DNA of 64,000 nucleotides from NCBI GenBank assembly GCA_022605425.2, contig JAKIMF020000005.1, positions 1 to 64,000 of the forward strand, in the 5' to 3' direction. Positions within the stretch are counted from its first letter, which is position 1; the number at the start of each line of letters is the position of its first letter. Made by a program: the position numbers and the translations under genes. The stretch is from Hamiltosporidium tvaerminnensis FI-OER-3-3 (Eukaryota > Fungi > Microsporidia). Below are positions 3,661 to 60,800 of the stretch, piece after piece. The notes below the pieces were generated by a model. That model did not search any database. It was not told where the DNA came from and worked only from the letters and a program-made list of their open reading frames with translations.

Positions 3661-5123
3661 TAAAAATATTGTATAGTTTTAATTCATTTAATGTGTTTTG
3701 GTTTTTGTAATTATTATATATTTTTCGTTAACGCTGATATTCAGTTACTTTAAACTTATGTAATATTATTTTTCATTTTACGGTTTATATCATTTAAATT
3801 ATTATTCTATTTATTTTCAAAATTTAAGTTATTTCACTAAAAAATATGTATTCTAATAAAGAAAGTTCTAGTCGTACTATTTATTTATCGAGCATTATTT
3901 CGCAAATAAAATAAATCCTATCGAACTACACTGTCGTTCTTAATTTGAATATCTCATAGATTCTTTTAGCTTATGGATCTAATTTTATGTCTATTAGCAT
4001 TCTATTTTTTTTATCTAATCTAACTTTTTATGTTTAAAATATATACTTTTCTTACATATTGTTTGTATTAATTTTGTTTTTATACTATTTTTCTTGATAA
4101 CCCAATTTTAAAGGCGTGTAAGATGTGATATAAATCTTTAAGCTAAATATTGCTTATGTGTTTGCTTTGATTAATTCACAATAATTTTTTTGAACTTTAA
4201 AATTTTGATTTTAAATTCTTTCATATTATGTAGAATACTATGGAGATTTGCTAAATGCATATTTTTTAGATATAATACTTTAGTAGGGTTTTTTACTCCT
4301 TATTTAATTACCTTTTCTATAATTTGTATTAAGTCATGTATATTTTTGTATTTTTATGTTTATTGTATATTAGTTTTGGAATTGTAATGTGCCTTACATA
4401 CTTAAAAAATGTACTTAATTTTATTATATATTTGTTTCTAACTATTTTCATGTGCTTTTAATTAAATTCAAATATTTTCGTTCAATCGTTCTATTGAAAT
4501 TCTAGTCCTAGTTTATCCTTTACTTGTTTTGAGTAAATTTATGTTATATAAAATTTATAAAGTCGTTACTTTAATGTAAATTGGTATATAGTTCGTTATT
4601 TATGTTTAAATAAATACTTTTGTTTATAGATGTTAAAATATAATATTTTTCTTGCATAAAAAGAGATTATATGTTAGATTACAGTTACCGATATTTCTTT
4701 CGTACATTTTTTTAGTTTATTATTCATTTTGGCTGTGTTTTCTTAATTTAAAAATTTACTTATATCAAATTTTTTTTGCTAAAACTCATTTTAGTTATAG
4801 CTGTATATACATTTTTTAGTTTTTTGGTTGTTTTTTTTTCGAAATGACTTTTTTTAATTCTGTTACATTTATTTTACTTCATTCTTTTCTTATTCATTTA
4901 CAAATTCAAGTCGTTACTTAATCAATCACTTGTTTGGGTCATGTAAAATAATTCAGGTCATTTCAATGAGTAATTTATGTTTCAAAGTAATATTTATGGC
5001 TAAATAATGTATAAAATTTCTGTTATTTATTCATTTTATATTCATTTAACTTCAAATTCATTATTTAATATCAATATGTAATATTCGTAAATATAAGTAA
5101 GTATTTTCTCTTCTGATATTATA

Positions 5124-7750
5124 TTAATATGTTAACCCTAATAAACTTATAAAATTTACCATAATTGGAAGTTTTTGTGTATAAGGTATTGGATGTTTTT
5201 TTATGGTTGTTTGGAACATTCGTACTATTAAAACCTTCACTCACTATTTAAAAACAAGGTTTTATAATCTTGGTCATAATAAGTTGTGTTCAGCCTAAAC
5301 ATGGCTGGATTAAATTTGGTTAACTCGTTTTAAAAAGCCCGCAGTATATTGTTGGAAGCATTAATCATATAAGGGATTCATACGTAACTATAGATTTTAA
5401 AATAACGTTTTACTATTTACCTTTCCTTAAATTAATCAAACAGTTATAGCGCATATTATATATGCATTGTTACAACTTCTTAAACACAATATAAACCTAA
5501 TTAAAAAAAGATATAAATGTGAAAAGTATTCAAATATCATGTATAATACTTTCGAGTAATTAATGAGAAATGTAATACTATCGCTTTCGTTGAAATATAT
5601 ATGATATTCTTTGGATTTTTAATGGCTTTGATTTACTAATATGTAATACAACTTATAGTATAATGAACTCTGATATTTGATTCATTTAAGTATATCCATA
5701 TAAATAAATATTTCATTTTAAAATATGTAGTGAGATTTCAATAACTTAAATCATTATAATTATACATATATTAATTCGATTTAAATATGTTAAGTATATT
5801 TTTGAATTATATATTATTTTACATTAAATCAGACTTTTAAATAATATATATAGTACAATAAAATGTCTGAAGTGATACAGAAAACTTTTTATCATGCTAC
5901 TTCTATATTCAAACAAATTCTAATAAATACTTTGCATCCAATTCTTGTAAAATTAAGTACTCTTAAGTTATTTGCCTAATTGAAAGACAATTGTTACAAT
6001 ACTTTTTAAAATAGTTCGTTTTATATATTCTTTTTAGTCTTTAGATTGTAACTTTTTTTATTAAGTATATATTTTAACAAAAAATAAAGCCAAAATAAAA
6101 AATGTAAATAATATTTTGATATGATTATAAGAAAGTTACACTTTAATTAGATTTAGTTCGGCTCAAACCTAATTAATATAACTAATTTTTAATATACTTT
6201 CTCGTAATTCTATATTAATCTAGAATCAAATCTTCAAAAATTAATGAGCTATCTATACTAGTCCGAAATATGCAAGGGTTATATCATTTTAATATCTAAA
6301 TATATTTATAAGTGAATATTAATTTAGAAAGATAAGTATAAATAATAGATACTGATTTGAAAGATAGGTATAAATTGTCTTATAATTAAAAGAAGCAAGT
6401 ATTTATAATACTACAAATAAAATTTCGATGAGTTTCTTTGTCGATTTATAGCTAATTATATCGAATTACGGTTTGTCTGCTTAAAATGTAAAAATAGAGA
6501 CAATTAGGTATTAAAAATCACTTAAACTATAAATGGGGCTGAGTTCTAAATGTTGTGGCATCTTTTACAAATAAATTAGTACTTTTCATTTTTAAACTTC
6601 TGATTCTTCCTTATATGAATAAAGATTAAACTAATTTAAAGGAATAGAACTTATGCCACAACCAGCTGATATATTTTTACTATAATATTTGCACCTGTAA
6701 TATATTATCTCAAACTATCCAAGCTGATTCGAATTATGGAATGGCATATCTAAGGTTATTTACACATTTTACCTTTGTTTAAAGGGTATTCTCAAAGAAC
6801 TCATCTGATCTTGTTTGAAGTCAAAATTAACTAAATAATTTAATGAATTCACTCATAATATATTGGTAGATAAATACCCAATATCATTAACTGGAATTTT
6901 CATAACGCGAAGGCAAATAACGCAATTATGAGGCGCATTTGCCTATTTCAAAAAATTCGAGGTAAAGTTGTATATTATAAAGAAAAAGATAAAATAATAT
7001 AATTTAATTTATAAGTTATAATTTTAAAAATTAATAGATTTTATTTACTTTACATCAAAAAACATTACTTTTGTATATTTGCTCGACTATTTCTTTTAAA
7101 CTTTAAGAAAATTTATTTGTTCCTCATGATATATGAGTGAATTGTTCTCTATGATTGAATTTTTTTCTTCTTGATAAAATGTGTTCTTCTTATTATAGAA
7201 ATCTTCGTAAATGGTTTGAGCTATTAACGCTTAAATAAGCCGTTTGGACTCAATACAAAGTTTGTATTATATATTATCTTCTATCATTTTTTGGTTTGTG
7301 TTAGAAGATTAAACATATTTTATATTTTCTAAAAATTTAAAGGTAATGCTGTTTTGAAGAAATATTTTTAAATGTATATTTTTTTAGTACTTTTTGCGTT
7401 AAAAAAATTCCAAACTCATAGGTCTATATGCTTCTTTTTGTTTGAATACTATTTTATTTATATTGATTTTATAGAAAACAGAGAATAAATAATGTGCCTT
7501 TTCTCATACTGACAATATTACAATAAACAATAAAAAATTAGAATTTTAGTGAATGTATATTCGCTCATCCAAAGCTTTCCTGGTTTTAGTACTTTTGATA
7601 AAAATAAAACTTTAGTTAAATGATATGCATCTTAACAAATAAATATTTTAATTTTTTTAAATTATTATTACTAATTTAGAAGATTCCATGTAGCAATTAT
7701 TTTAAATATATCTCTATACGTATTAAACAATAAATTTTTTTAGATAATAC
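5124..7750 (-). pseudogene. Family Y copy B (5'-truncated, divergent subfamily)
   Basis: Minus-strand C-terminus reads ...IPYMINASNNILRAF...LNTTYYDQD...KHPIPYTQKLPIMVNFISLLGLTY* with the stop at 5124-5126. Homology to copy C continues at least to aagaactcatctgatcttg (~6796 vs ~13960). Confidence 0.6.
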
Positions 7751-44748: not shown

Positions 44749-46800
44749 AGCCCTATAATTTCCCTAACCCCGGTAGGGAAATACAATTTAATGCTTTAAA
44801 ACATTTATATAAATAATTTAAAATCTTTCTAGTTGGATTTCCCTACTTTACTAACCGATTTAAATATAGTATTATTACCGACGCATGCAAAGTAAAAAAC
44901 CCTAATAATACAAGAGATTTCCCTAACCTAAAATTAAAAAAATAAAGCATTATAAGTAATTATAAAAGAAAAAATTTATTAAATTATGCCTAAAGAATTT
45001 AGGGAGTAAAAAACGTCCCAACGAATAAAGCTATATATTTAATGTAAAGACAGTTTACATTCTTCAATTATAGAGAGCCCTTATCAAAATTGTAATTGCA
45101 AAAATCAAAATTTTTTCCCTATACAATTCCGCTTCCCCCTAACCCTATCTTTTTATACTCTAATACTTCTCTTGAATTACACAATTTAACTATTGTCAAC
45201 CAAATATGTTACCTACCTTTTTTTAGGAAAAAAATTATTTTTAATTTTCCTAACCCTTCTCCCTAACCTGTCCTTTTTTTCCACTAAAAAATTATTTATA
45301 GTTCCTATGCTGTTTTTACTCCTTATTTTTTTTACCAAAAAAGTTTCTGAAAATTCCCTACCAATTGATTACTTCTTTTACCCTAACCCTTCCCTAACCC
45401 TTTTCCTTTCCCTAAACTCAGTAGCTCTTTTCCCTACCAAATGATTTATATTCTACTCTTTCTCTCCAAAAAAAAACTTATTTACCCCTAACTAACTTTT
45501 TCCTATACATATTTTGTTTTTCCTAACTTCCCTAACTTTCTAAACCTTCTTAAATACTTATTTTTTCCTTAACTTTTACTCGTAATAACCTATTGTTTTT
45601 TCTTAACTAGATGTTTTTCTCAATCCTACTAATTTTTCCTTAACCCCACTTGAAGTTTCCCTAACCTAATTATTGTATCAAACATTTTTCTATTTAACAA
45701 ATATTATTTCTAAAACTGATTCTATCTTCTATTTAAAATCATTTCTTTTCGTATAAACAAATTTTCAACCTAACACAATTCTGTTTTCCCAAACCAGGAT
45801 TCTGCTTGCCCTAACTTTATGTTATAACAGACTTTCTTTTTTCCTAACTTTTTTCTTGTTTCCCTACTTTTTTCTGTTTCCCTTAACTTTCCATTAATTT
45901 TTTTTACCAACTGTCCTTTCCCCAACCGATCTTGCAAAAATAGCTGGGGTAAAAAATATAAAAATTTATAATGAATAATTTCCCTACTGAAAAAATAAAA
46001 AAGTGTTTTACCCTAACCTATTGTTATTAAGCGAAGTATTTTCCCTAACCCAAGTACTATCCTAAAGTATGGCACTTCTTTCCTAATTTGTGGCTTATAA
46101 ACATAGTAATTTTTTTTACAAAAAATTTCTTTCATTTTCCCTAACTTATTATAAGAAATTTAAAAAATTTACGTTAAAAACTTCGTTTTTAAAAATAAAA
46201 AGACCCTACGGACACGAAAAAAAAATATAATTAACCTAACTTGCTTTATTAAAAACATTGGGCGAAAGTAGGGAAATATATACCCTAACAAATTTTTAAA
46301 CAGTGAATTATATGAGTAAAGATAAAAAAGGAAATAAAAGAATAATAATGAATTTTTAATTTTCTTCAAAAAAATTCGAGAAAGTTAATAAAGAATTAGA
46401 GAAAATGATTTACCGAATAGAAATATTTAAGAAAACTAGAGATGTCCGTACTGGGAAAATAAAACAATCTCCTATTTAGACAATACCAAAACTTGACCCT
46501 AACCCTAACTGAATTGGTTAGGGGATTTTCTTTATCTTTCACAGGTTCTGAGTTAGGGTAAGGGCCAAACTGATTATTATTGACTTGCTTCTGTAATAAG
46601 TCAAGTGTAAAAGTGAAATTTTTGAATTTTTGGTAGTTATGAGGTTGGGGTCTTCAGATTGTGTTGGGTGAAAAGGTTGGCCTGATAATAAAATAAATTC
46701 AGAATAATGAAAAGATGTTATTGGGTCAGGGTAAAGGGTTGGTAGTTATAATTAAACCGTTCTTATGAATTCTATCATTTTTAGGTTTTTTTTGTTGATA
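44749..46800. repeat. R element copy 3 (divergent), rich in dispersed telomere-like CCCTAAC/GTTAGGG motifs
   Basis: More than 15 CC(C)TAAC motifs from 44763 to 46510, then GTTAGGG near 46517 and 46553. Anchors to copy 1 include tggggtaaaaaa (~45945 vs ~10653). Confidence 0.6.
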
Positions 46801-48455
46801 TTTATTTTTTCTTGTCTATATAGCTACAACATATAATGTTACAAATTGTTACAGACTTTTAACGGTAGTAAGTCAAAAGAGTATCTGAGAAATTTAATTT
46901 ACCGGTATAAAATGTATTGTTTAAATAATTTTGATATCTGTTAGGATTCAAAATCTAAATATAGAATTATTATTTTTTAAAAAAGTTAAAGTTTAAAAAT
47001 CCCAAGGTTTAAATGTCTTTCGTTTCTAAAAACAATTCTAACTTTTTTATTTTAACTATTTTTCAAAATAAAGCCACCATTGGTAAATTAATTCAAAAAA
47101 AATGATTTAATATTATTTATTGGTAAAAACTTTTTATGCCATATCGTAAATCATACAAAAAATTGTAAAACATTGTCTAAGCTATATTTAAAAAATGTGT
47201 TAGTCTAATTACACATATTTACTATTTCTACTATTAAAATAAAAGTATAATATTACTTTAAAAATTCTTTAGTAGAAGATATTGCTACTATACGTTATCA
47301 CCGTATATTTGAATCTAAGCAGATTACACACAATTTCTGAGAAAGCAATAAATTTATGTAAATAAGTCAAAGCTGCTAGAAACAGAAAAAAAATTTTTAA
47401 GACTTCTTTATGAGATATGTTTTAATTAACGGAATAAAAACACGCACTAAAAAATCTAAAGATCTTTTCTTTGTTTCCCTAAACCATAAACCTAAAAATT
47501 AAAAAAAGCAAGAAGCATATATAAACTAGATAGGAGCACATATAAAAGACTTTTTATGATCCCTGTACCTTTACAGGACTTGTTTATTTGTTAAAGGTGA
47601 ATTTGTACCATTTCTTTTACACCCCATTTACGTTGCTCCTGAATTTCTTTCGCGAAATAAACTATATTTGGTGACTTAGAATAATCTTAAATAGAAATTT
47701 TATGGCTTATATAAAACAGAGCCTTTAGACTCTAAATTCCTGCCTGTGCCCCGTTTGTTTTGTTTTAAAAAATAATACTTGTCGGTTAATCTTTGGCAAA
47801 AACCGCTAATCTCAAACTAGGTCAGGGAATAGAAAGAAAAATATGGGAGATACATTGCGTAATACTTTCTTTATATAACAAATCCTATGTAATAGCATTC
47901 AAATTAATTAATTGAAGGAATTTAATGCTTTTCTTGCAAGATAAAATGTAAAAAAAGAAAAATGTTTTTTAAATGGAAATTTAATTAATTTTTTTGGAAA
48001 AGTATATTCAGATAACGAAAAACAATTTCAATGAAAATGTTTTATTTAATCATTTTGTTTTTTTTTGATTAAATTCCCTGTTTTTACAAAATTCTATTTT
48101 TACAAGTTTAGCTTTCTATTCTGAAGTCCGTTTGAATACAGGTATATATCTATTGGATAAGATAAGGTATCTTGGTTCTGCTGAATCTTTTTTTAGTATT
48201 CGGAAAACAAAAAATAATTTGCTATGATTGTAAAGTTTTTAATTAAATAATATTCCTGCGATATTATTTCTGTAACCGTTTGATTTATATTTCTTCAATT
48301 AATATATTACGATATAATGTATTCTTCTTGTTCGTTGTATCTAATTAAATTTATTCGGCTTTGGATTTGTATGTTTCGCTTTTCAAAACTTAGATTACTA
48401 CTGTCGAATCAAAAAAATTCATTAAACTATAAATACGTAGCGAATTTCAGTATTT

Positions 48456-49362
48456 ATGAAAAAAACCGAGAGCTCGGAGTCAGACAATGATCCCACTATT
48501 CCAAGAATCAAATATGTGATTGGGAATCAGGCACCGAAGCTTCCCCATACGCCTAGAAAAAAGAGGGATCCGAATAAACCAAAACTACCCTGTCCGTATT
48601 GTTTCTCGTTAAATACATCGAATAAGGGTACGGGGAAGAACCTTAATGATCCCCGTACCTATTGCAACAGCTGTAAGCGATCTTATAGCACACAAATCGC
48701 TGAGAATTTTGCTTATGCGTTTCAAAATAAAAAGGGTGAAATAAACGAATCGGATAAGTCAAATATCAGTGTAACGAAAAAGACTAGCGATCCGGCTATT
48801 ACTAAGCTTGTGAATTCCCCGCCGGAGGAAGAGTTTACTAATCTAAACCAGTCGAAATTGACCAAAGAACAGATTGCGTTGGTAATTTCAGGTGAATCTC
48901 CGTTTCCTATTACAAAATATATATTTGTTTATTTTACAGGAATCAAACGTAATAGGACAAGGCTGCAAACTTTCCCTGCAATCAATTAATCAAGAAGTTT
49001 CGAGATATATAATAAATTTAGACTTCATAGGGGAAAGTACGCTGGAAGTGATTTGTATAGATAAATACAAATCAAAAATTGTTACATTAATTGAAGGTTT
49101 GCCAGCGACCTACCTAAAAAACAGTCCTGAAATTAATGAGCAGAAACATCTAAATGTTTCTGCTCTGAAAGAACGAATGAAAAAAATCTACCAAAGAAAA
49201 GAAAACAAAAATTTAAGATTAAAAAGATTTGCAGTTCGCTTAAACAAATTAGATGGGGAAGAACTGCTTGAGTTTCTCATGAGCGCCAATATAATGGCCA
49301 AAAGTATTGGCTCGGAAGAGAAACTCAACCCCAATAAAATAAAAAAAAATAATGTTGTATAG
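48456..49362 (+). CDS. LINE ORF1-like protein with a C4 zinc ribbon; predicted join(48456..48881,48940..49362), 282 aa
   Basis: CPYCFSLNTSNKG...RTYCNSCKRSY lies in ORF 48456..48989. ORF 48892..49362 is in another frame. Removing GTAATT...TTTTACAG (48882-48939) fuses them as QIAL|ESNVIG. Confidence 0.6.
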
Positions 49363-50560
49363 TATTGGCTTTTTGAACGTAGGAGGACTTTCGGTTAAAA
49401 AAATAGAAATTATAAATTGTGTTTTATTGGATAATAAATTAGATATATTGGCTCTGGCAGAAACCTGGCGTGATGATATTGATAACTTAAATACAAACTA
49501 TAGGATAGTTGCCAGATTGCTTTCTAAAAAGGTCAAGAAAAGATACTCAAATTCTGAAGGGATACTTATTTTGGCGAGGAAATCTATTTACCCCCAAATA
49601 ATTCCTTCAATCACAGACTTTGGTATCTGTATAAAGATGAATGATACATTACTGATATTCATATATAAGTCACCAGCGGTTTCTGCCTATAAAATTATCA
49701 ATAAAATACCAAGTAAATATGAGGGCTTTGATGTCTTAGCATTGGGTGATTATAATTTGGAAAACTCTGTTGCTTACGAACAAATTGTTCTCGAACAGCA
49801 CGCGGAATTGGGCTTATATGAAACAAAACTGGCACCATTCACATATAAGCACGGCTCCAAAACCTCAACCCCCGATAAGTGCTTTTCCAATTTTAATGTT
49901 TCACCTGTTGTCATTGAAATTGAAAGAATGAATCATAAGCTAATAAAAGTGCAAGTTGGGCGGGTTGGAACGCAATTGGAAACAAATTATAATATAAATT
50001 TTTTGAAAAACGCCGACACACTAAGCGAAGTAAGGAAAAGGATTGAAACACTGACAACTAAGAACGAATTCTTTTTAAATACTCTGCCAATTGACGAAAA
50101 ATTGAATTTGCTGCATAAGATTTTGCTAAAAGCGGCAAGAAAATTGCAAATCAGAAAACAGGTACAGAGGGTATCACATAACCCTATTTTGTCACACTTG
50201 AAAAGATTGAAAAGAAACAAGTCAGCAAATAAGGATGCACATTCGGTGCAATTGTTGAGAAAGGAAATTAGAAGGTTAAGTAGGAAACTTAAACGATTGG
50301 GTGTGGAAGAAGGTAAGGTCAAACATAGTAACTTACAACCTTCCGAGCTGCATAAATTAGTTTGTGGTAGCAGTACAAAAAGAAAAATTTCTGAGAGACA
50401 AATAAAGTTTGCGGAATTGCAATTTAACAAAGAAGACTTGGTCCCTGTGTCTGAAACGAAAAAGAAAATTGAGAAATTCTATTTTAGTATTAACAAAAAA
50501 CAAGACACAAAATGTGACAAATTGACAGGGATTACAATGTGGAGCTATTGGATGAAATAA
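49352..50560 (+). CDS. LINE ORF2 N-terminal part: APE-type endonuclease plus basic linker
   Basis: Motifs FLNVGGL, DILALAETW, GILIL, IYKSP, LGDYN, TY, PDKCF and NH (SDH position) occur in APE order. Confidence 0.9.
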   Translation: MLYSIGFLNVGGLSVKKIEIINCVLLDNKLDILALAETWRDDIDNLNTNYRIVARLLSKKVKKRYSNSEGILILARKSIYPQIIPSITDFGICIKMNDTLLIFIYKSPAVSAYKIINKIPSKYEGFDVLALGDYNLENSVAYEQIVLEQHAELGLYETKLAPFTYKHGSKTSTPDKCFSNFNVSPVVIEIERMNHKLIKVQVGRVGTQLETNYNINFLKNADTLSEVRKRIETLTTKNEFFLNTLPIDEKLNLLHKILLKAARKLQIRKQVQRVSHNPILSHLKRLKRNKSANKDAHSVQLLRKEIRRLSRKLKRLGVEEGKVKHSNLQPSELHKLVCGSSTKRKISERQIKFAELQFNKEDLVPVSETKKKIEKFYFSINKKQDTKCDKLTGITMWSYWMK

Positions 50561-52089
50561 GAAATCTAAAATTGGGTAAGTCGGGGGGTTTGTCGGGCAT
50601 ACGAAATGAACTAATTAAAGCTTGCCCGATGAATTTTATTGGACATTTGAGTGTACTTTTTAACCAAATTATATTGGAGAAGAAAGTACCTATGGCATGG
50701 AAATGCCATAGAATAAGACTTATCAGAAAAGAAAAGAAAAGTTATAGGCTTATTGCGTTGATTGAAGAGACGCGAAAATTGTTTGAAAAGTGTATTCAAA
50801 GAAAGCTTTCATTTAGGCTTTCTACTCGACAGACTGGTTTTAGAGAAAGACATTCTCCAATAGATAATGCTTTGGGTGTTGATCATCTGTTAAGAAAGGG
50901 AGCTGGTAAGTTAATTTGTGTTTCATTAGATATAAAGTCGGCGTTTGATACAGTGTATAGGTGGAATCTTTATAAGAAACTAATTGTTTACCAATGTCTA
51001 TCACTAAATGATACCCTTCTGATAGCGGAGCTTATTGAAAACAATTCGTACGTCTTGGAACATGGAAACAGAAAAATCGATTGTTTTACGGCTTCAAGGG
51101 GTATACCACAGGGAAGTGTGCTTTCACCTAATTTGTATAATGTTTTCATTGATGACCTATTGTTGTATATTCCGCAGAATCTAAGAAAAAATCTGTTTAT
51201 CTACGCTGATGATATTTTTCTATTTGGTGCCACACTAAAACAGATAAGGAAAATTATCAGATGTATACAATTGCATGCATCTGATAACAAGTATGAGCTT
51301 AACCAACAGAAGTGTTTCTACAACGCGAATAAGAGATGCCGTATAGTTGTAAATGGTTCCCCTATAGAAAAACAAAGCCCTATGCATTATTTGGGGTATT
51401 ACTTTAATTTGATGGGAACGGATACCAATTCATCAATAAAAGAAACAAGAAAAAAAAGTTTGAAGGCGGCTATTGTTATGAAGAATGAACTTATTAAAAA
51501 AGTCGGCATAGGTAATAGTGGATATTATAGGCTTCTTTTGAAAGGATATGTGACGTTTATTAGACCACATTTGGATTATACAATGTTTTTATTGGCTGCT
51601 AATAAAACCTATGTTTCAGCAAGTGATAGAATCCAGAAGTCAGTCGTAAAGTATTTGTTTGGTTTGAATCAGAAAATTCCGAGTGCTTTCTTATATGCCT
51701 TGTTACCAATCGAAACGATGATACAAAGATCCAATAGACTTACACTTTCACTTGGTTTGAGACTAATTACGAATATTGATACTGGCTTGTATACTGATTT
51801 GATGCAAAACAATACAAAGAATTTTAAGCATATAAAGAATACCTATGAAAAATATATATATGATACAAGAATAATCCCTATGAAACTGTTGAAAGATTTA
51901 AAAAATAGTTTTCTTAAAGATAATAGAACACTACTGGAACAAATAACTCCCCTTAGATTTTATGATTTCAAAAATATTAGATACAATGATTTTACGAGAT
52001 TATTGAATATTTTAAAGGAAGAAAAATTTATCGAATTACAAGATATTGTTGCGTTTTTTATTGAACAAAGCCGAAACCCTCCTATGTAA
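50539..52089 (+). CDS. LINE ORF2 C-terminal part: non-LTR reverse transcriptase, frameshifted from the APE part
   Basis: Motifs GKSGGLSGI, YRLIAL, QTGFR, LDIKSAFDTV, GIPQGSVLSP, YADD, YLG and YVTFIRPHLDY. Confidence 0.95.
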   Translation: MELLDEIRNLKLGKSGGLSGIRNELIKACPMNFIGHLSVLFNQIILEKKVPMAWKCHRIRLIRKEKKSYRLIALIEETRKLFEKCIQRKLSFRLSTRQTGFRERHSPIDNALGVDHLLRKGAGKLICVSLDIKSAFDTVYRWNLYKKLIVYQCLSLNDTLLIAELIENNSYVLEHGNRKIDCFTASRGIPQGSVLSPNLYNVFIDDLLLYIPQNLRKNLFIYADDIFLFGATLKQIRKIIRCIQLHASDNKYELNQQKCFYNANKRCRIVVNGSPIEKQSPMHYLGYYFNLMGTDTNSSIKETRKKSLKAAIVMKNELIKKVGIGNSGYYRLLLKGYVTFIRPHLDYTMFLLAANKTYVSASDRIQKSVVKYLFGLNQKIPSAFLYALLPIETMIQRSNRLTLSLGLRLITNIDTGLYTDLMQNNTKNFKHIKNTYEKYIYDTRIIPMKLLKDLKNSFLKDNRTLLEQITPLRFYDFKNIRYNDFTRLLNILKEEKFIELQDIVAFFIEQSRNPPM

Positions 52090-52113
52090 TGTTAGTACTT
52101 GGCCATACTAACA
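52090..52113 (+). other. Stem-loop directly after the RT stop codon
   Basis: TGTTAGTA-cttggcca-TACTAACA: a perfect 8-bp stem with an 8-nt loop. Confidence 0.55.
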
Positions 52114-52799
52114 AGAATACTATATAACATTCTTTGGATAAAGTGAATTACATGTTATTAAATAAAGTTTTTTTATTTTATATGCTTTTAGTTTTATTAT
52201 AAATTTATTTTTTATTTAATTATAAAGTTTTTTTAATCTTATTTTATTGTTATATTATAATTTCAAATTTTTTATATCTTAATGTTAAATTAAAATTGTT
52301 TCCTATCTAAAACATTTTTTAATATGTCTTGCAACAATACGTACCTCTTTTTTATTTTTTTTAAACGAAAATTTGAATTTTTTTACTAAGAACTTAATTT
52401 GAATTTTCATTAAAAGTTTTTACCTGATTTTTATATTATCTATTTTGCTTGTTATGGAAATATTGAACTTTTGCTGGTCCAAGGGTTATACCTAAGCTTT
52501 TTTTTCTATTTAAGATAAATAGTGTTATACTCAAATTTCGTTTTTTTTTATTTACTTGAAACAATTTTTTATATTTAGGTATATGATCCATTATTTACAT
52601 GTCTAAAAAGCATTTTTGTTTGTTACCTAAGTCCTTAATTCGGAAAACTTTGGTTTTACTTTTTTTTGGAGAGCATTCTTGATGTTTTTCTTGGATTAAG
52701 TTTAATTGTATTGAAATTAAAATTTTTTATCTGAAAGCAATAAAATAAAATATTTTAAAGGCTTTTATAATAAACTACCTAATTTTTTAGTCAGAAAAT

Positions 52800-53900
52800 A
52801 TTACATTAAACTTTAAATTTTACAAAAAATAAAAGTAAAAACCATATTTTATTTAATTACATTCTCTTCGTCTGGTTTCAGTTATGGAATCTTCTTAATT
52901 CGACATATAAATCTTTAAATTTGTAATATGTAAGATCGAAGGCTATTTACTCTCTAAACTACTATTTTTCTTGTTATATGAACCTTCTAACATTTACGTA
53001 ACTAATAATCTCTTTTGGCATATTTTTATATTTTAGTGTCTTTGGTTTGTTGTTAAATTTAGAATGTCAATAGATTTTTTGTCTTTCTTAGATTTTCTAT
53101 ATAATATATACATTTTTAAAAATAAGTTCTAAAAGTGTTTGCTAAACGGAAGGTTTTGAACAATCTTTATAACGTTACTATAGTCTAAATTGGTGCCTCG
53201 TAATTCAGTTTGTGTCTTTTTGCAATATCTTGGATTTATATTCTTTTCTTTCTTAATCAGCCGGTATTTCTTTCTTAGAACTTGTAAGTATTTTTATTTA
53301 GTTATTAGCTTATCTAATACATGGTTTACATTATTTTTCAAAATTTTATTTTTTTAAACTCAAGACTGGTTTTTTATAACAATTTTATATTTTATAAGAC
53401 GGTTCGAATTTGGTTTTTAAATTTGTTGTCAAAGAAGTTTTAAAGAATGCCTAAACTTTCGTTGGTTTTAGGTGTTTGTAATTTTTTTAAAAGAATTTAC
53501 TTTTCTTAGAAGGTTTTATATGTTTTTTTTAATTTTTAAACTATTTTCTAAATTTATTAGAATGATTTTTACTTATTTACTGGAATTTTTTAGTCGTTAA
53601 GTTTTTTATATCTTTTTACCTGTACTTACAATTTTTTAAAATTTTTTATATGTTTTTACATGTTGCTTTTGTAGTTTTTTACGTTTTCTCTTAAATTTAG
53701 CTGTTTTTTCGTGTTTTTTTACAGCTTTTGGAATTTCCTAAATTTTTTATTTTTTTTTTAAAACTTTTTAAATTTTCAATTTTATAATATTTAGAATTTT
53801 AGACTTGCTTTATGTTTTATCAACTTATTTATTGATAGGTATATCTTCCGAGTGTCTTTTAACGTATTAATAAGATTTTTTTTGTAAAACTGTATACTAA
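52800..53900 (-). pseudogene. Possible decayed Lys-rich ORF
   Basis: The T-rich plus strand gives minus-strand fragments such as PKAVKKHEKTAKFKRKRKKLQKQHVK (~53655-53730). No long open frame. Confidence 0.2.
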
Positions 53901-55384
53901 ATGAACAATTATTTGTTTTTGACAAAAATCTGAAGATTTTTTTAAAAAAATTATCATTTTTGAATTATAGCTCGGTAAATTTAAAATAATTACGCCCGTA
54001 AAATTATCAAAGCCTAAACCTTGTTCAAATTACTTTTAAAAGTGGGTACTTTCACTTTTATAATAAATTATATAAGTTATATATTAGTTTTTTTTTATTA
54101 TATATTTTTTTTATCTTTTTAATAGAGCTAGAATTTTATTCTCGCTACGAAATTCGAAGAATTTCTATAAAAAAATATTTTTTCCAAAAATATTTTATGT
54201 TACCATTCTTAATTACTATTTTCTGTTTTTAGTAAGTAAAAATTTTGGAAAAATTTTTTCAATAGAGTAAATAAAAATATAGATTTGGAAGATTTATGTT
54301 TGGTTTAATAAATTTCGAATAACTTCCATCTTTCAACAAAAATTACTGTAAACTCTTAATTAAGATTGAATTATCCTTTTTTATAACTTAAATTTTAAGT
54401 TCTTTACTCAAAAATAGAAAAGTTAAAGCAAATATTTGCAACTAAAGGTGATATCTCTTTAAATTTAAAATATTGTAAGATTTTAACTTGATTCTGTATG
54501 TAATAGTAGTTATTTTTTGCTGGTTTAAATTTAATTTTTTTTTTATAAAAAATTACTTTTTATTTTTATATCCTATTAAATATGTATTAAACTAACTGAC
54601 AGCATTCATCTTTAAGGAAATTGAATAAAATATAAATCGTAATTCAAATAATGGTAAAAAACATATGTTTTTTGACTATAGTAAAAATAGAAACTTATAT
54701 TTTTATAAGTATTATTAATTTACCTAAAAAGGAAATACATTTGTAAATCTGTAAATATCTTATAAATCTTACTTATATCTAGTTTTTCCAACTTAATAAC
54801 CCTATAGAGAATCAGTAATAAATTGTACTTATAAAATTTTGATTCAAATTTAGGTTTGTTTACACAACGAAAGAAATTTTGGTTTTCTAAAAAAGTAAAT
54901 TTGGTTTTGCATGTTTTGAGTTAAAAAGTTACTTTTTTTTTGAAAGTTATTTTTCTTTAAAAAATTCGAAGAATGTTTTTTGTAGTATCAAATTTTTGTT
55001 GAAAAACTTTTAATGTACGTCAATTTTGAAATAAATCAACAAACCTCTAGATTCTTATGTTTCTTTTCGAAGAAAAGAAAGAGAAGACAAGTAATATAGA
55101 CCCTTTTTGTATTAATTTTCTAAACATTCCTTATTAAATTATTATTTATCATTTAAGCTAAAGAAAATAAGTTTAACATATGAAGAATAAATAAATTTTT
55201 TATTTTTTCACTTGTTAGATACGGATTATAAACGTATTTTGGATATCTACGGTTAAAGCATTTCTTGATATACCTTGGAATTTTATTTTTATATAAAATA
55301 CAATTTATTGACTTTACTTTTCGAAACCATATACTTATTTTTTCTTTCATACTTTTACTTTTTCTATTTATTATATTTTGAATA

Positions 55385-55777
55385 GATATTCTCGAAGAGA
55401 ATATCAAAAGTGTGGTTTTTGTAAGGCTTTTATAATGGATATTCTCAAAGAGAATATCAGAAGTGTCTCTTTAATTATTTTTCTAAAATAGATATTCTCG
55501 AAGAGAATATCAGAATCGAATTTCATGTAATAGGCCTAAGATAAATACGTTCAAAGAGAATATCATATATGTCTCTTTAATTATTTTGGTAAAATAGATA
55601 TTCTCGAAGAGAATATCAAAAGTGTCTCTCTAATAAAGTTAAAGTAGAATTTGGATTTTCGAAGAGAATATCAGAATTGAAGTTCATTTAAAAGACATGG
55701 AGGGATATTCTCGAAGAGAATATTAGAATTGTATTATATTTATTGTATTATTAATGTATATTTATGAAGAGAATATC
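55385..55777. repeat. Array of eight 21-bp palindromes (GATATTCTC-gaa-GAGAATATC) with ~32-bp variable spacers, period ~53 bp
   Basis: Units start at 55385, 55438, 55491, 55544, 55597, 55652, 55704 and 55757. Confidence 0.95.
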
Positions 55778-55949
55778 GGAAATGCAAAACTTTTATAATT
55801 TTTCAAAATTTAAAATGATTTTACACTATTATTTTTTTTGATTAAGCAATGACATATGTAAAAGAAATTTAAAGAAATATAGCAAAAAATTTATTTGTCT
55901 ATGCGAATTCATGAAATGATATTTTTGAAGATAGTCCTATATTTGTATA

Positions 55950-57382
55950 GGCGAAAGTTGTTTTAAATAGGTAAAAGATGATTTGTAGGGTATTTATTTT
56001 TTTACAATATATTTTAGCTTCTCTCTTAGAGTTTATTAGATATCTTATCAAGCTTTAGGAACGTATCATTATTATCTAAAAATTTGCAATTGGTTCAAAA
56101 AAAATATAAAAATATAAATATAGGTGAATTTTTAATATCGTGGCATCTTCTACTGTGGTAATCTTACTTTGTCTATGGGTATGGGATTATCTATCTCTTA
56201 GTAGTAATCCTCAGATGCCCTGATATATTTCTTTTTCACCATACTAATGTAGAAGCAATGAAACACATGCCACAAATACTGAACGATTTCGTTCTTACTT
56301 TGATATTCGCAGCGGAATGTACTTTTACTCTTACTATCTACGCTGATATGGTTTGTTAAAGGACTTATGTAAGATTATTTGCATAAGTCTGGACATAAAT
56401 CCATAGGGTAGTAAACAACTAACTCGTTCGATCTCGTAAAACAGTCGAATATACTTAAATAAGTGAATTTATTCACTTATGAAAATGTTGATATATAATC
56501 GTATTAACATCAATACCTGTTTTACAGTATCTCTAAGGCAATGAGCTCGATAACGGGACAATATTGCCTATTTAGATAGAATATTTTTTAAAGAATGTAA
56601 ATACAGCAAGTATTTTTAGATTTAAAAACTTATAACACATTAGGGCCTCTTCTATATGAAACTAAATAGAAAATTCGAATTATCTATTTCTCTCTATCTT
56701 ACCCCTAACTTGCTCTTTATGTATCTAACCCTCTCCTCATAAACTTTAAATCAAAATCAAATATAGTATATGTCTTTGGAAAAACTAATTTCTGTTTAAA
56801 TAAATGTGTTCGCCCTAACCCTTAGAACATAATGTAGATAGATCGTTTATTATTGGTTGAGAGCATGTAGTTTCTGTGGTAAATTGTTTATTTACTACGT
56901 CTCGTTTCATGGATTCCTCTTCAAAATGTTCCGAAATTCGTTCTTTTCCTGCCTTTTCGGAAAACGCAATATGGAATGCTGGTATTGGAGTAGGTGAATA
57001 GATTGAACTTACAGTTTTATTAGCATCGCTGCATGTTATATGTAGTGATGCATTGTCAAAAGAACTTATTTCTATGTTTTCTTCTGGTATGTAATTTTCA
57101 TGTAAATAAGATGTCTGAGGATTCGCTTGGAAAGATTCTTGTTTATTTTGAAGAAATTCGGTCGTTGATGTTTCTATTTCTTGAGGTTGAATTGGATCAC
57201 TTTGTATCAAAAAAACCTTTGCAAAACTTAAATAGTAAAAATCAATCAATTCTGGGATAATAATCGTTATTTTCAGCTATAGAATTTGGTTCCCAAACTC
57301 TTTTGTTGTTTCTTTGGTTAGTTGTAGCAAAAAGTTTTAATAAGAAAGTAAAAGTTGCGGGAAAACTAAATGAAATTTTCAT
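55950..57382 (-). pseudogene. Family X copy 3 (distant paralogue); includes ORF 56815..57249
   Basis: ATG at 57382 starts the signal-like MKISFSFPATFTFLLKLFAT, followed by a S/T/E/Q-rich region. YLNRQYCPVIELIAL, LHKSFNKP, AANI, RAS and VEDA match copies 1/2. tttaaataaatgtgttcg is shared at ~56795, ~8781 and ~39798. Confidence 0.55.
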
Positions 57383-57899
57383 GGTTAACTTTTTTTGTAC
57401 GTATATAATTTTTCATTGTTCTATCGATTCTTTTAGAATTTAAAAATTTTCATTTTTTTAGATTCTGGGTCATGTAATACAAGAACCATAAAAATTTTAG
57501 AAATTTGCATTTTCTGGTAGAATATTTTTAACTAAAAGAAATTTGATTCAAGCAACCCGAAACTTTAAGACATACAGATTAAAAAATGACAGTTTTAGAA
57601 AATTACTTTACAAGATGAAAGTTTTATATTTCTGGTTATTTACGGTTCGTACTTTTTATCATCTAAGAATATTAATTTCCGATCTTTTGTATTATTGAAT
57701 TAGAACCATTATATTTGAATTTAATAAAAAATACAACCATTTATTATAATATCAAGATACATTTTAGTTTTAGTGATAATTTTTTATAACTCTTAAATTT
57801 TTGTTTAGTTGACCAAAGAAATGTTCTAGAAAATTCAAATATCATAAAATTTAAAAATATTTCCAGCGATTTGATTTCGAATTTTCAAAGCTAGCAAGT

Positions 57900-60800
57900 A
57901 CCGTATAAATCCTCTTTTTTTCGGTTTCATATTTGTTCAATTTTGCCATCATGTTTTTTTGGGTTACACCTAATACATTATACTTTCTCTTTGAAAGTAA
58001 ACTCGGATTTTCATGACCACTGGGCCATCGGCATCAACACTTTTTGATGAATTATAATTAGAAAATAATTATATAAAAGAACAATATGGCAAAATTTACG
58101 CCTTTTCCTTAAATTAACATACATATTTTAATGAAAATTTAAGTTCAAATGTTCCCAGAATGCAGGTTTTTACATTTTTTCATATTTTCATTATAGTTCT
58201 TCGCTGCTCAATATGTTTTGAAAAAATAAATCACATCAAATTATTAGATACAAAACCAACACTATATAATAAAACTCTGCATCTTTTTTCTTATTTAAAT
58301 AATGAAATATATATGTTGACAACCAAATTATTTGTTTATAAATAAATCACAATCAATTGAAAAACGGTTGTAATTATGAATACAATTCGATGATTTTGAC
58401 TAAGAAATTTTTTATATATATAATTTTTAATATTGTAATTATTTAATAGGTTAACATATGGTAGATGGATAAGTTCTATTTTGAGAATTATTTGAATTTT
58501 TGTAATTTTATGTATATCAACAAGTTTAATCAGTTTTTAAGAAATATTTTTTTCTATTTTTAAGCAATTCATTTTTATAGTTAAAATTTTTCGAATTTAT
58601 ATCTCTACTAGAGATTTTTTTCTTTAAGAAACTTTTGTTTCAGTAATTTTTTTAAATTTTAATTTATATCATTGGAATTTAGTTAAATTGTACTTTTTCA
58701 AGAAAAGGCTTTAATTGTTTTTATTGGTTTTCAGTAATTGATGCGTTTATTTGGTTTATATTTTAAGATTTTATCACCTAAATTATCATAAATTTCGTGT
58801 CTATCTACGTATTTACTGATAACTAAATCTTCTATTATATAATATATATTAGTATTTGCAATTAATTGGGCAAGTTTATAAATAGTTTCCATAAATATTT
58901 ACTACTATTCATTTTTACAGGTAGGGATGATATTTTTTGCCTAATTATTATATCAAACTCTCAATCAATAACCGTTGATTTCCAAAATATATCATTAGTA
59001 AAGATTTAAAAAATACCGCGTATTAGAATTCTTACTCAATTTATATACATCTGATCGTAATGATGTTCTATCGGTTTATAAACATAATTTATTGCATATA
59101 AATTTTAATGTAAAAATATTTCCTAATTTTCCAAATTAGTTGTGGAATCGATTCTTTTTTTAGGATAAAAAATACTTCTTTAGTTTTACTTGCTTTATAT
59201 TGGTGCAAGAGAAACCATGAAAAATTTATATGTATTTTATTATTCGAATTTATTTATTTAGGAAAAATTCTCTTTTACCTGTCCCTTGTATTCTTGTTCA
59301 GAAAGAAAGTCACCAAACCCTAAAAAATTCAAACTTCACACCGGGTATAGAAATATATGTTAAAATCATAATAAAAATATTTTGACTATCTAAATTAAAT
59401 ATAGTTAAGCCCAAAAAAATGTATAGAGCAACTATATCTTAATATAATAGAAAATTAAATAACTTCTTTTTAACACAAATAGTATTTGTTTTGTCATATC
59501 AAGCGGTTTACATTAGAGATATAACCATAGCTTATCATCATGTGAAGAACTAACTATACAAAGAATACAGCGCATGAATCTTTACATTTTATTTCTTTAG
59601 GTTGATTTACCCTAAAAATTTTTTTTTGTACAATTAATTAACCTTGACCGATTTTCAGACGGCTAAAAATTTATTTTTGATCCGAATAGGCTATGATTAC
59701 ATACCGTTTCGAGGTTTTATACAAAGTTTTTAGTTCATTTATTTTACCAGCGACAAATAAAAAAATAAATATATTGTGCTAAGTTGTATAAACTAGAATG
59801 CATATGGGATATACATAAAAATTCTTCTTTTTAAACCTCTTATACTTATGCTTAATACAACATTTTTGACAAGTTATTGTTTAAGTATTAATTTTTTTAA
59901 AACATTAATTTGAGTTATTTATTCGCGTAATATAATTTCAATTCATTTCTGATTTTTTTTGAAACTTCTAAAGCAATCATAGGTTCTAAAAAAATATAGT
60001 CTAAGTGAATTAAAGCTGTGTATAATTATATTTTAAAATTTTCAAAAAGTTATTTCCTAACTAAATTTTTTATAAATTAAAACATTGAACTGTTTGGACT
60101 ATTTTTTTGAGAAAATATTGATCACTTGGATTTTATAAATTGTTAAACATTCGAAGGAAGATCATTCGGTTATAATATTATACATAATTGATGTTTTTAG
60201 GGTATATCCGAATAATAGAAAATCTTTAATTAACTACATATTTTCTTATAAACTATAAAGCAATTTAACAATATATTAATCTTTTTTTCTTTTTTTCTGA
60301 AATAAAATTTGAGAATATTTTCTTTCATTCTTTATTTCTATTTTGATTGTCTAATTTAAATGTATTTTGGAATTGTCTATTTATCTTCTATTAAGAGGCA
60401 ATCAATACAAATAAATGGTAATAATATCATTATACTATTTAGTATTCAGAATAATTTCATAGCCAATTCATTGGTATCTAAAATCTTGCAAAAAATCTAT
60501 TTTCATTCGATTTTTCAAGTTTATTATTGGAGTTTACGTAGGAAGACTGTTTAAATTTATTGGTGTTTTAATTGCTAAAATATAAATTTATATAGTGAGA
60601 AAATATTTTCGTTTTTTTTGCTGATTTGAAATTGAAACTTTAAAATATAAGCTCTGATTCAAAAGTATAACCAAATTTTCAAAAAAAAAATATTTCTTAT
60701 TATATTGGTTTCTAATTTAACTAAAATACTGCTTAAACCACAAATTCACAAGAAATATTTTTTAAGTGTTAATTTCTAGATTTCTTACAAGTAAAAAGAT

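What the first reader, a model, noticed from the sequence alone, without database searches (positions are those of the whole stretch)
55385..55777. CRISPR-like array of phased 21-bp palindromes in eukaryote-like DNA
Seen: eight copies of a 9-3-9 inverted repeat, separated by ~32-bp spacers that vary far more than the repeat, at a near-constant 53-bp period. Spacers 2/4/5 and 3/6 are related, so the array arose by tandem duplication. Known: 53 bp is about five helical turns, and C-GAA-G forms a very stable DNA mini-hairpin. Inference: conserving the palindrome and spacing but not the spacers suggests selection. Possible roles are same-face binding sites for a dimeric protein, a replication origin/enhancer like baculovirus hr regions, transposase subterminal sites, or processing hairpins of a small-RNA array. 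It lies ~3.3 kb downstream of the RT gene; any link to it is untested.
Basis: partly seen in the sequence, partly recalled or inferred. Interest (0 to 1): 0.8.

Follow-up and report, generated by a model that had tools for sequence, protein, structure and literature searches.

The report
Phased palindrome repeat near chromosome ends
This is a short tandem repeat with a palindromic core, sitting inside an old non-coding block of DNA that has been copied among the chromosome ends of a Daphnia-infecting microsporidian; it is an ordinary chromosome-end repeat that is now slowly decaying, not a CRISPR-like system.

Summary
The array is real. Eight units lie in phase, 52-55 bp apart. Five are true 9-3-9 palindromes (0.06 expected by chance). 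Three keep only the right arm.

The palindrome is found only inside one low-copy repeat block. I found at least 18 copies of the block, 3-190 kb from contig ends. All point the same way relative to the nearest end. Five diverged lineages of the block (65-80% identical) all carry the array, with 2-9 units. A four-unit array is ancestral.

The block has no credible gene. The "family X" gene next to it is a chimera of an unrecognised 77-codon frame and a fragment of another gene. The LINE upstream is a young insertion, and arrays exist without it.

Among recent copies the arms change at least as fast as the flanks (6.8% vs 4.3% variable columns). The changes are mostly G/C to A/T. So there is no sign of present selection. 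Only the old contrast remains: arms alike between units, spacers not.

Verdict: a subtelomeric minisatellite whose palindromic core may be a former protein-binding site. No RNA evidence could be obtained. Interest is low to moderate.

The parts
55385..55777 (.). 53-bp tandem array of eight units. Intact palindromes are at 55385, 55438, 55491, 55597 and 55704. Units with only the right arm are at 55544, 55652 and 55757.
52264..56822 (+). Core of the chromosome-end repeat block that holds the array. It is non-coding. Homology to lineage D starts at 52264 and to lineages B and C at about 52837. It ends at 56822 in lineage A and at about 56600 against B and C.
44774..46303 (+). Upstream part of the same old block. 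In lineage C (L025) it lies about 530 bp from the core, with no LINE between them.
47269..52263 (+). Young LINE insertion (ORFs 48456-52089, broken here). It is 93-100% identical to the copy on C16, while the flanks are about 70-79% identical. The 5' limit was not resolved.
56120..56359 (+). Small open frame about 340 bp downstream of the array. It has ATA where lineage C has ATG, and one internal stop. It has no relatives outside the block copies and is probably not a gene.
56818..57249 (-). Fragment of an unrelated gene family that abuts the right edge of the block. Copies elsewhere have open frames of 415-673 aa.

Best explanation
The array is a minisatellite (53-bp unit, 2-9 units) inside an old, essentially non-coding, low-copy repeat block found only in the subtelomeres of Hamiltosporidium tvaerminnensis.

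Shown:
- The block occurs at least 18 times, 3-190 kb from contig ends, always in the same orientation relative to the end.
- It falls into five diverged lineages, and a four-unit array predates their split.
- Array length differs between copies by whole units.

Inferred:
- The block spreads by duplication and recombination between chromosome ends, which keeps orientation, and not by transposition.
- Units are gained and lost by unequal exchange. For example, C12 lacks four units (212 bp) and C13 has one extra.
- The palindromic core, about 30 bp including the 21-bp palindrome, was held constant while the rest of each unit diverged. It therefore probably once served as a docking site for a dimeric DNA-binding protein.
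- Today's copies are eroding under the genome's A/T-biased mutation, without detectable purifying selection.
For: The palindrome at up to 1 mismatch occurs 29 times in the genome, against 0 for the reversed control, and every occurrence lies in a copy of the block. Copies near contig starts are on the + strand and copies near contig ends on the - strand: 18 of 18, two-sided p = 8e-6, though the copies are not independent. The lineages align in register with four units; lineage B keeps only units 3-4, and lineage E also shows phased units. No credible coding sequence is present: translations are low-complexity, the small frame shows no codon periodicity, and it has no homologues, no Pfam family and a low Atlas recognition score. 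No flanking terminal inverted repeats were found. On recent branches, variable columns are 16/234 for arms, 12/322 for spacers and 244/5637 for flanks. Of 56 differences in the arms, 34 lie at the 6 G/C positions and 33 of those go to A/T (p = 4.5e-5). For an older constraint: arms are 0.84 identical between units against 0.49 for spacers. Three of five lineages keep a perfect palindrome, where neutral decay gives p of about 0.006-0.06.
Against: The arms are much more alike between units than the spacers, and the 51-55 bp phase is kept in all lineages. This could equally mean that some copies are still under selection. The recent-branch test pools mostly redundant copies and has few events (16 variable arm columns). 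The right arm is nearly invariant in lineage A (0.97), which neutral decay does not predict. No expression, chromatin or binding data could be obtained.
Confidence: 0.6

Rival explanations
1. The array is a working set of same-face docking sites for a dimeric DNA-binding protein that acts only at chromosome ends. It would mark subtelomeres, nucleate silencing or form a boundary, in the manner of Plasmodium falciparum SPE2 arrays bound by PfSIP2.
For: The form matches. It is a two-part symmetric motif in tandem arrays, found only in subtelomeres, at a fixed position and orientation in a repeated block. SPE2 sites are 94% subtelomeric, keep position and orientation, and are spaced 120 bp apart in TARE2/3 (PMC2829057). 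The loop is free to vary while the arms are kept. The 51-55 bp spacing, about five helical turns, is kept in all lineages. Arms are 0.84 identical against 0.49 for spacers between units.
Against: The arms are not slower than the flanks among recent copies. Changes hit the G/C positions that a protein would most likely read. Three of the eight units in this window have lost one arm. The motif occurs nowhere else in the genome. Only about 12 of 34 contig ends carry the block.
Confidence: 0.22
2. The array promotes recombination. The palindromes would extrude as hairpins or cruciforms, attract breaks and so drive exchange and copying of the block among chromosome ends, in the manner of the repeats upstream of silent surface-antigen genes in trypanosomes (from my own knowledge).
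For: The hairpin is stable as single-stranded DNA. Whole-unit gains and losses occur within arrays. The arms may mutate faster than the flanks, as expected for a fragile site (1.6-fold, p = 0.07). The blocks are exchanged among ends.
Against: Homology between copies runs through the array on both sides, so the array is not a preferred boundary of exchange. A 9-bp A/T-rich stem is short for cruciform extrusion. No functional gene sits downstream to be moved.
Confidence: 0.08
3. The array belongs to a mobile element. It could be the subterminal binding sites of a DNA transposon, or flanking sequence carried along by the neighbouring LINE (3' transduction).
For: 39.6% of the genome is interspersed repeats, most of them unclassified (PMC10542269). 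This LINE family has only five copies, and all of them lie directly upstream of the block.
Against: No terminal inverted repeats flank the block, and the array is about 3 kb inside it, not at an end. All copies are co-oriented and lie in subtelomeres. Lineages B, C and E have the array without the LINE, and lineage C shows an empty site. The LINE is far younger than the block.
Confidence: 0.06
4. The array is a source of small RNAs, a CRISPR-like memory array, or a replication origin or enhancer of viral type (baculovirus hr-like).
For: Only the look supports this: phased palindromes separated by differing spacers.
Against: The spacers are duplicates of each other and are conserved between copies. 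The host is a eukaryote with telomeres. The only ORFs of 150 aa or more in the 64-kb window are those of the LINE. No Rfam family matches. Viral contigs hold only 4 single chance matches, and metagenome contigs hold no phased pair. The 9-bp stems are too short for Dicer-type processing (from my own knowledge).
Confidence: 0.03

Closest known systems
Telomere-associated repeat elements (TAREs) of Plasmodium falciparum and of Encephalitozoon
   Same: Both are non-coding repeat blocks confined to chromosome ends. They contain internal tandem repeats, share position and orientation between ends, and vary in copy number (PMC2829057; PMC12449221).
   Different: Here the block is low-copy, at least 18 copies on about 12 of 34 contig ends. 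It lies up to 190 kb from the end and often several times per end. It is not a fixed ordered series next to every telomere. There is no sequence similarity.
SPE2 motif arrays bound by PfSIP2 (P. falciparum)
   Same: Both are two-part motifs in tandem arrays that are almost exclusive to subtelomeres, with conserved position and orientation.
   Different: SPE2 is a direct repeat of two 6-bp halves with a 4-bp gap, and it has a known binding protein and ChIP evidence. This motif is a 9-3-9 inverted repeat with no known binder and no sign of present constraint.
Minisatellites with a conserved core
   Same: The unit is tens of bp long and arranged head to tail. Length changes by whole units. A conserved core sits beside variable unit remainders, and the location is subtelomeric.
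   Different: The core here is a palindrome, and the four ancestral units have kept distinct, recognisable spacers across block lineages.
Baculovirus homologous regions (hr)
   Different: This is cellular subtelomeric DNA. No viral relatives were found, and no enhancer or origin activity is known.
CRISPR arrays
   Same: Both have short partly palindromic repeats at a regular period.
   Different: This is a eukaryotic chromosome. The spacers are related to one another and are inherited with the block. No cas genes are present, and the repeats decay unit by unit.

Membership tests
Minisatellite / tandem repeat | Head-to-tail units of 10-100 bp | tested here: met
   Tandem Repeats Finder gives period 53. 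Eight units are spaced 52-55 bp apart.
Minisatellite / tandem repeat | Unit number varies between copies by whole units | tested here: met
   There are 9 units on C13, 8 on C14 and C2, and 4 on C12 and C9. Lineages C and D have 4 and lineage B has 2.
Subtelomeric (telomere-associated) repeat element | Confined to chromosome-end regions | tested here: met
   All 18 copies lie 3-190 kb from a contig end. The lengths of C3 and C14 are inferred from the contig order.
Subtelomeric (telomere-associated) repeat element | Same orientation relative to the telomere at different ends | tested here: met
   18 of 18 copies are co-oriented: + near contig starts and - near contig ends.
Subtelomeric (telomere-associated) repeat element | Present at all or most chromosome ends | tested here: not met
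   The block was found at about 12 of 34 contig ends. This is a lower bound, because several contig ends are unresolved.
SPE2-type protein-docking array | Two-part motif in tandem arrays at a conserved subtelomeric position | tested here: met
SPE2-type protein-docking array | Motif under purifying selection relative to its surroundings | tested here: inconclusive
   For an old constraint: arms are more alike than spacers between units and between lineages. Against a present constraint: among recent copies 6.8% of arm columns vary against 4.3% of flank columns, and the decay is A/T-biased.
SPE2-type protein-docking array | A sequence-specific binding protein | not testable with these tools
   This needs EMSA, pull-down or ChIP.
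CRISPR array | Unique spacers of foreign origin between identical repeats, with cas genes, in a prokaryote | tested here: not met
   The spacers are related (up to 0.84 identity) and are conserved between copies. The genome is a telomere-bearing microsporidian. The only ORFs of 150 aa or more in the 64-kb window are LINE ORFs.
DNA-transposon subterminal repeats | Array close to an element end, mirrored at the other end, with terminal inverted repeats | tested here: not met
   Homology continues for at least 1 kb on both sides of the array. No terminal inverted repeats were found.
LINE 3' untranslated region | Array present only where the LINE is present | tested here: not met
   Lineages B, C and E have arrays without the LINE. 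The C12 copy follows the telomere tract directly.
Structured RNA family | Match to a curated covariance model | tested here: not met
   No Rfam match at E up to 0.1 in window 52000-58000.

The most novel reading that the evidence does not exclude
The best-kept palindromes may still be bound by a dimeric protein specific to chromosome ends. The array would then be a microsporidian counterpart of the Plasmodium SPE2/PfSIP2 landmark, organising subtelomeric chromatin or promoting exchange between ends in a parasite group where subtelomere biology is almost unknown.
Probability: 0.2. Interest if true: 0.6.

Novelty: new member of a known kind. Interest (0 to 1): 0.27.

Why it matters
The two genome papers on this species that I read do not describe its subtelomeric repeats. 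"Subtelomer" does not occur in the assembly paper, and the 2025 comparison covers only rRNA operons and methylation. This block and its array give a simple landmark for the large subtelomeres of H. tvaerminnensis, which reach 190 kb. It can be used to trace how chromosome ends exchange sequence and to check the unresolved contig ends. The array's variable unit number could serve as a strain marker. If a binding protein were found, this would be the first sequence-defined chromosome-end landmark in microsporidia. On present evidence, however, it is an ordinary decaying repeat.

Tried and rejected
No reads were laid, so there is no evidence on transcription or small RNAs.
Lineage E and the C3 copy were judged only from match tables and pattern hits.
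- tblastx between block copies matched in all six frames and said nothing about coding.
- Promoter of a "family X" gene: rejected. The downstream frame has no codon periodicity, no homologues, no Pfam family and a low Atlas recognition score. The 144-aa frame on the other strand belongs to a different family.
- Heat-shock-element and GATA-pair readings of the motif: considered from memory only. The central GAA is not conserved between lineages, and the outer GATA/TATC letters include the G/C positions that decay most. Neither was pursued.
- Population or sister-species copies, sought through the look-up of encoding contigs: nothing on record.
- The phased right-arm pattern search was swamped by unrelated microsatellites (controls 32 and 43 against 78 and 59). 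It was used only for the lineage E loci.
- Telomere repeats, which are of the same type as in people, were seen at the starts of L018-L020.

Full report
**Observation**

Window 55385-55777 holds eight units in phase. They start at 55385, 55438, 55491, 55544, 55597, 55652, 55704 and 55757, with spacings of 53, 53, 53, 53, 55, 52 and 53 bp. Tandem Repeats Finder calls a 53-bp period.

The motif GATATTCTC-NNN-GAGAATATC occurs five times in the window at up to 3 mismatches. Four are perfect and one has a single mismatch. Chance gives 0.06, and none of 100 shuffles reaches five.

The other three units keep a perfect right arm but have lost the left arm, with 5 of 9 positions pairing. Among the eight units the right arm is 0.97 identical, the left arm 0.71 and the spacers 0.49.

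**Organism**

G000 has 21,638,905 bases in 17 contigs. Several contigs start with CCCTAA repeats.

The contig order implies that C14 is scaffold_5 (1,464,916 bp, no telomere assembled) and C3 is scaffold_6. This mapping is an inference. Introns are rare in this genome (98 predicted), so a real gene should read as one open frame.

**Where else the motif occurs**

At up to one mismatch the palindrome occurs 29 times in the genome, against 0 for the reversed control. Every occurrence lies in a copy of one larger homologous block. The block corresponds to window about 52264/52837 to 56600/56822 and is 65-97% identical between copies.

In lineage C the block also includes window 44774-46303, which there lies about 530 bp from the core.

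I count at least 18 copies, on C2, C3, C5 (three), C6 (two), C7 (two), C9, C12, C13 (two), C14 (two) and C16 (three). They lie 3-190 kb from a contig end. Copies near contig starts are on the + strand and copies near contig ends on the - strand, 18 of 18. That fits spread by exchange between chromosome ends and not by transposition. No terminal inverted repeats flank the block.

**History of the array**

The copies fall into lineages:
- A: C14, C2, C13, C12, C9
- B: C5, C6 and C7 copies near the ends, plus C5:128k
- C: C5:107k, C6:902k, C16:113k
- D: C16:189k, C3
- E: four copies seen only in match tables

Lineages A, C and D align in register with four units. Their spacers are distinct from each other but recognisable across lineages. 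Lineage B keeps only units 3-4, and lineage E also shows phased units.

So a four-unit array predates the split of the lineages. The C14/C2/C13 branch has 8-9 units, and C12/C9 lack four units. These are whole-unit changes of the kind made by unequal exchange. Unit spacing stays at 51-55 bp everywhere.

**Is the palindrome under selection?**

Evidence for an older constraint:
- Arms are much more alike between units than spacers are (0.84 against 0.49).
- Between lineages, arms are 0.75-0.85 identical. Loops are 0.17-0.67, spacers 0.47-0.77, the 1.5 kb upstream 0.64-0.80 and the small frame 0.70-0.77.
- Three of five lineages keep a perfect unit. A simple neutral model gives p of about 0.006-0.06 for this.

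These comparisons are biased. Most loci were found through the motif, and any arm aligns with any arm.

Evidence against a present constraint:
- 21-column windows over the palindromes are not among the conservation peaks of the block.
- Among closely related copies, where alignment is unambiguous, variable columns are 16/234 (6.8%) in arms, 12/322 (3.7%) in spacers and 244/5637 (4.3%) in flanks. Pairwise counts agree.
- Of 56 departures from the reference unit in 25 distinct units, 34 fall on the six G/C positions and 33 of those go to A/T (p = 4.5e-5). The left arm carries 39 and the right arm 17.

This is the pattern of A/T-biased erosion, not of a protein-read motif being kept. My reading is that the core was constrained when the four units diverged, and that most or all present copies are decaying.

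**Surroundings**

The block has no credible gene. Its translations are low-complexity.

A 65-109-codon frame about 340 bp downstream of the array is open in about eight copies. In the window it has ATA at the start position and an internal stop. It shows no codon periodicity and no more amino-acid conservation than its DNA identity predicts. It has no homologues, no Pfam family and a low Atlas recognition score.

The 144-aa frame at 56818-57249 on the minus strand is a fragment of another family. Copies of that family elsewhere have open frames of 415-673 aa. The fragment abuts the edge of the block at 56822.

**The LINE**

The element at about 47269-52263 is 93-100% identical to the copy on C16, while the adjoining block is about 56-79% identical. 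Its 3' part has only five copies in the genome, all directly upstream of lineage A or D blocks.

Lineages B, C and E have arrays without the LINE, and on C12 the block follows the telomere tract directly. The array does not belong to the LINE.

**Elsewhere**

No Rfam family matches. Viral contigs hold four single matches of the motif, and JGI metagenome contigs hold no phased pair. The two genome papers on this species that I read do not describe subtelomeric repeats. An older draft-genome paper notes only unrepeated A/T-rich stem-loops.

**Comparison and verdict**

The closest known things are telomere-associated repeat elements and conserved-core minisatellites. The closest functional analogue is the SPE2 array bound by PfSIP2 in Plasmodium falciparum.

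I file the array as a new member of a known kind: a subtelomeric repeat with an internal minisatellite. I give a 0.2 chance that the best-kept palindromes still dock a protein.

**Limits**

Further genome stretches could not be fetched. Telomere letters were not sent to any search tool, and no contig was taken for human.

Noticed in passing
window 47269-52263; L026:1-4960; L016: This LINE family (ORF1 302 aa and ORF2 817 aa, both intact on C13 and C16) has only five copies. All five sit at the same place directly upstream of the chromosome-end block. The copies are 93-100% identical while the flanks are about 70-79% identical. Either the LINE inserts at one specific site, or its copies are kept alike by conversion. 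Lineage E blocks share homology with the last 200 bp or so of the LINE (from about 52060).
   Followed up: partly
L018:1188-3932 and 4687-7428 (C9 start): Two tandem LINE ORFs of 913-914 aa (endonuclease plus reverse transcriptase) follow the telomere tract directly. Both have their 5' end towards the telomere. This is a different LINE family from the one in the window and could be a telomere-associated retrotransposon array.
   Followed up: partly
L022:4664-6328 (C5:125664-127328): An intact 554-aa ORF with a DUF5906 domain (E = 2.6e-10) lies in the subtelomere between two copies of the block.
   Followed up: no
window 56818-57249 (-): This is a fragment of a gene family whose other copies have open frames of 415-673 aa (C12:2650902, C7:832330, C14:1377213, C13:1487048), all in chromosome-end regions. 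It has no Pfam family.
   Followed up: partly
L019:1-1700 (C12 start); L020:1-300 (C5 start): On C12 the block starts about 1.7 kb from the contig start, straight after the telomere tract, as if the end had been cut back and healed. The C5 telomere tract shows degenerate variant repeats.
   Followed up: no
window 1-64000 compared with C13:1-64000 and the C2 end: C14 and C13 carry the array at almost the same offset (55385 against 55541). Neither contig starts with a telomere. These contig ends share a duplication of at least 10 kb that is about 93-97% identical, which may explain why the ends were not resolved in the assembly.
   Followed up: partly
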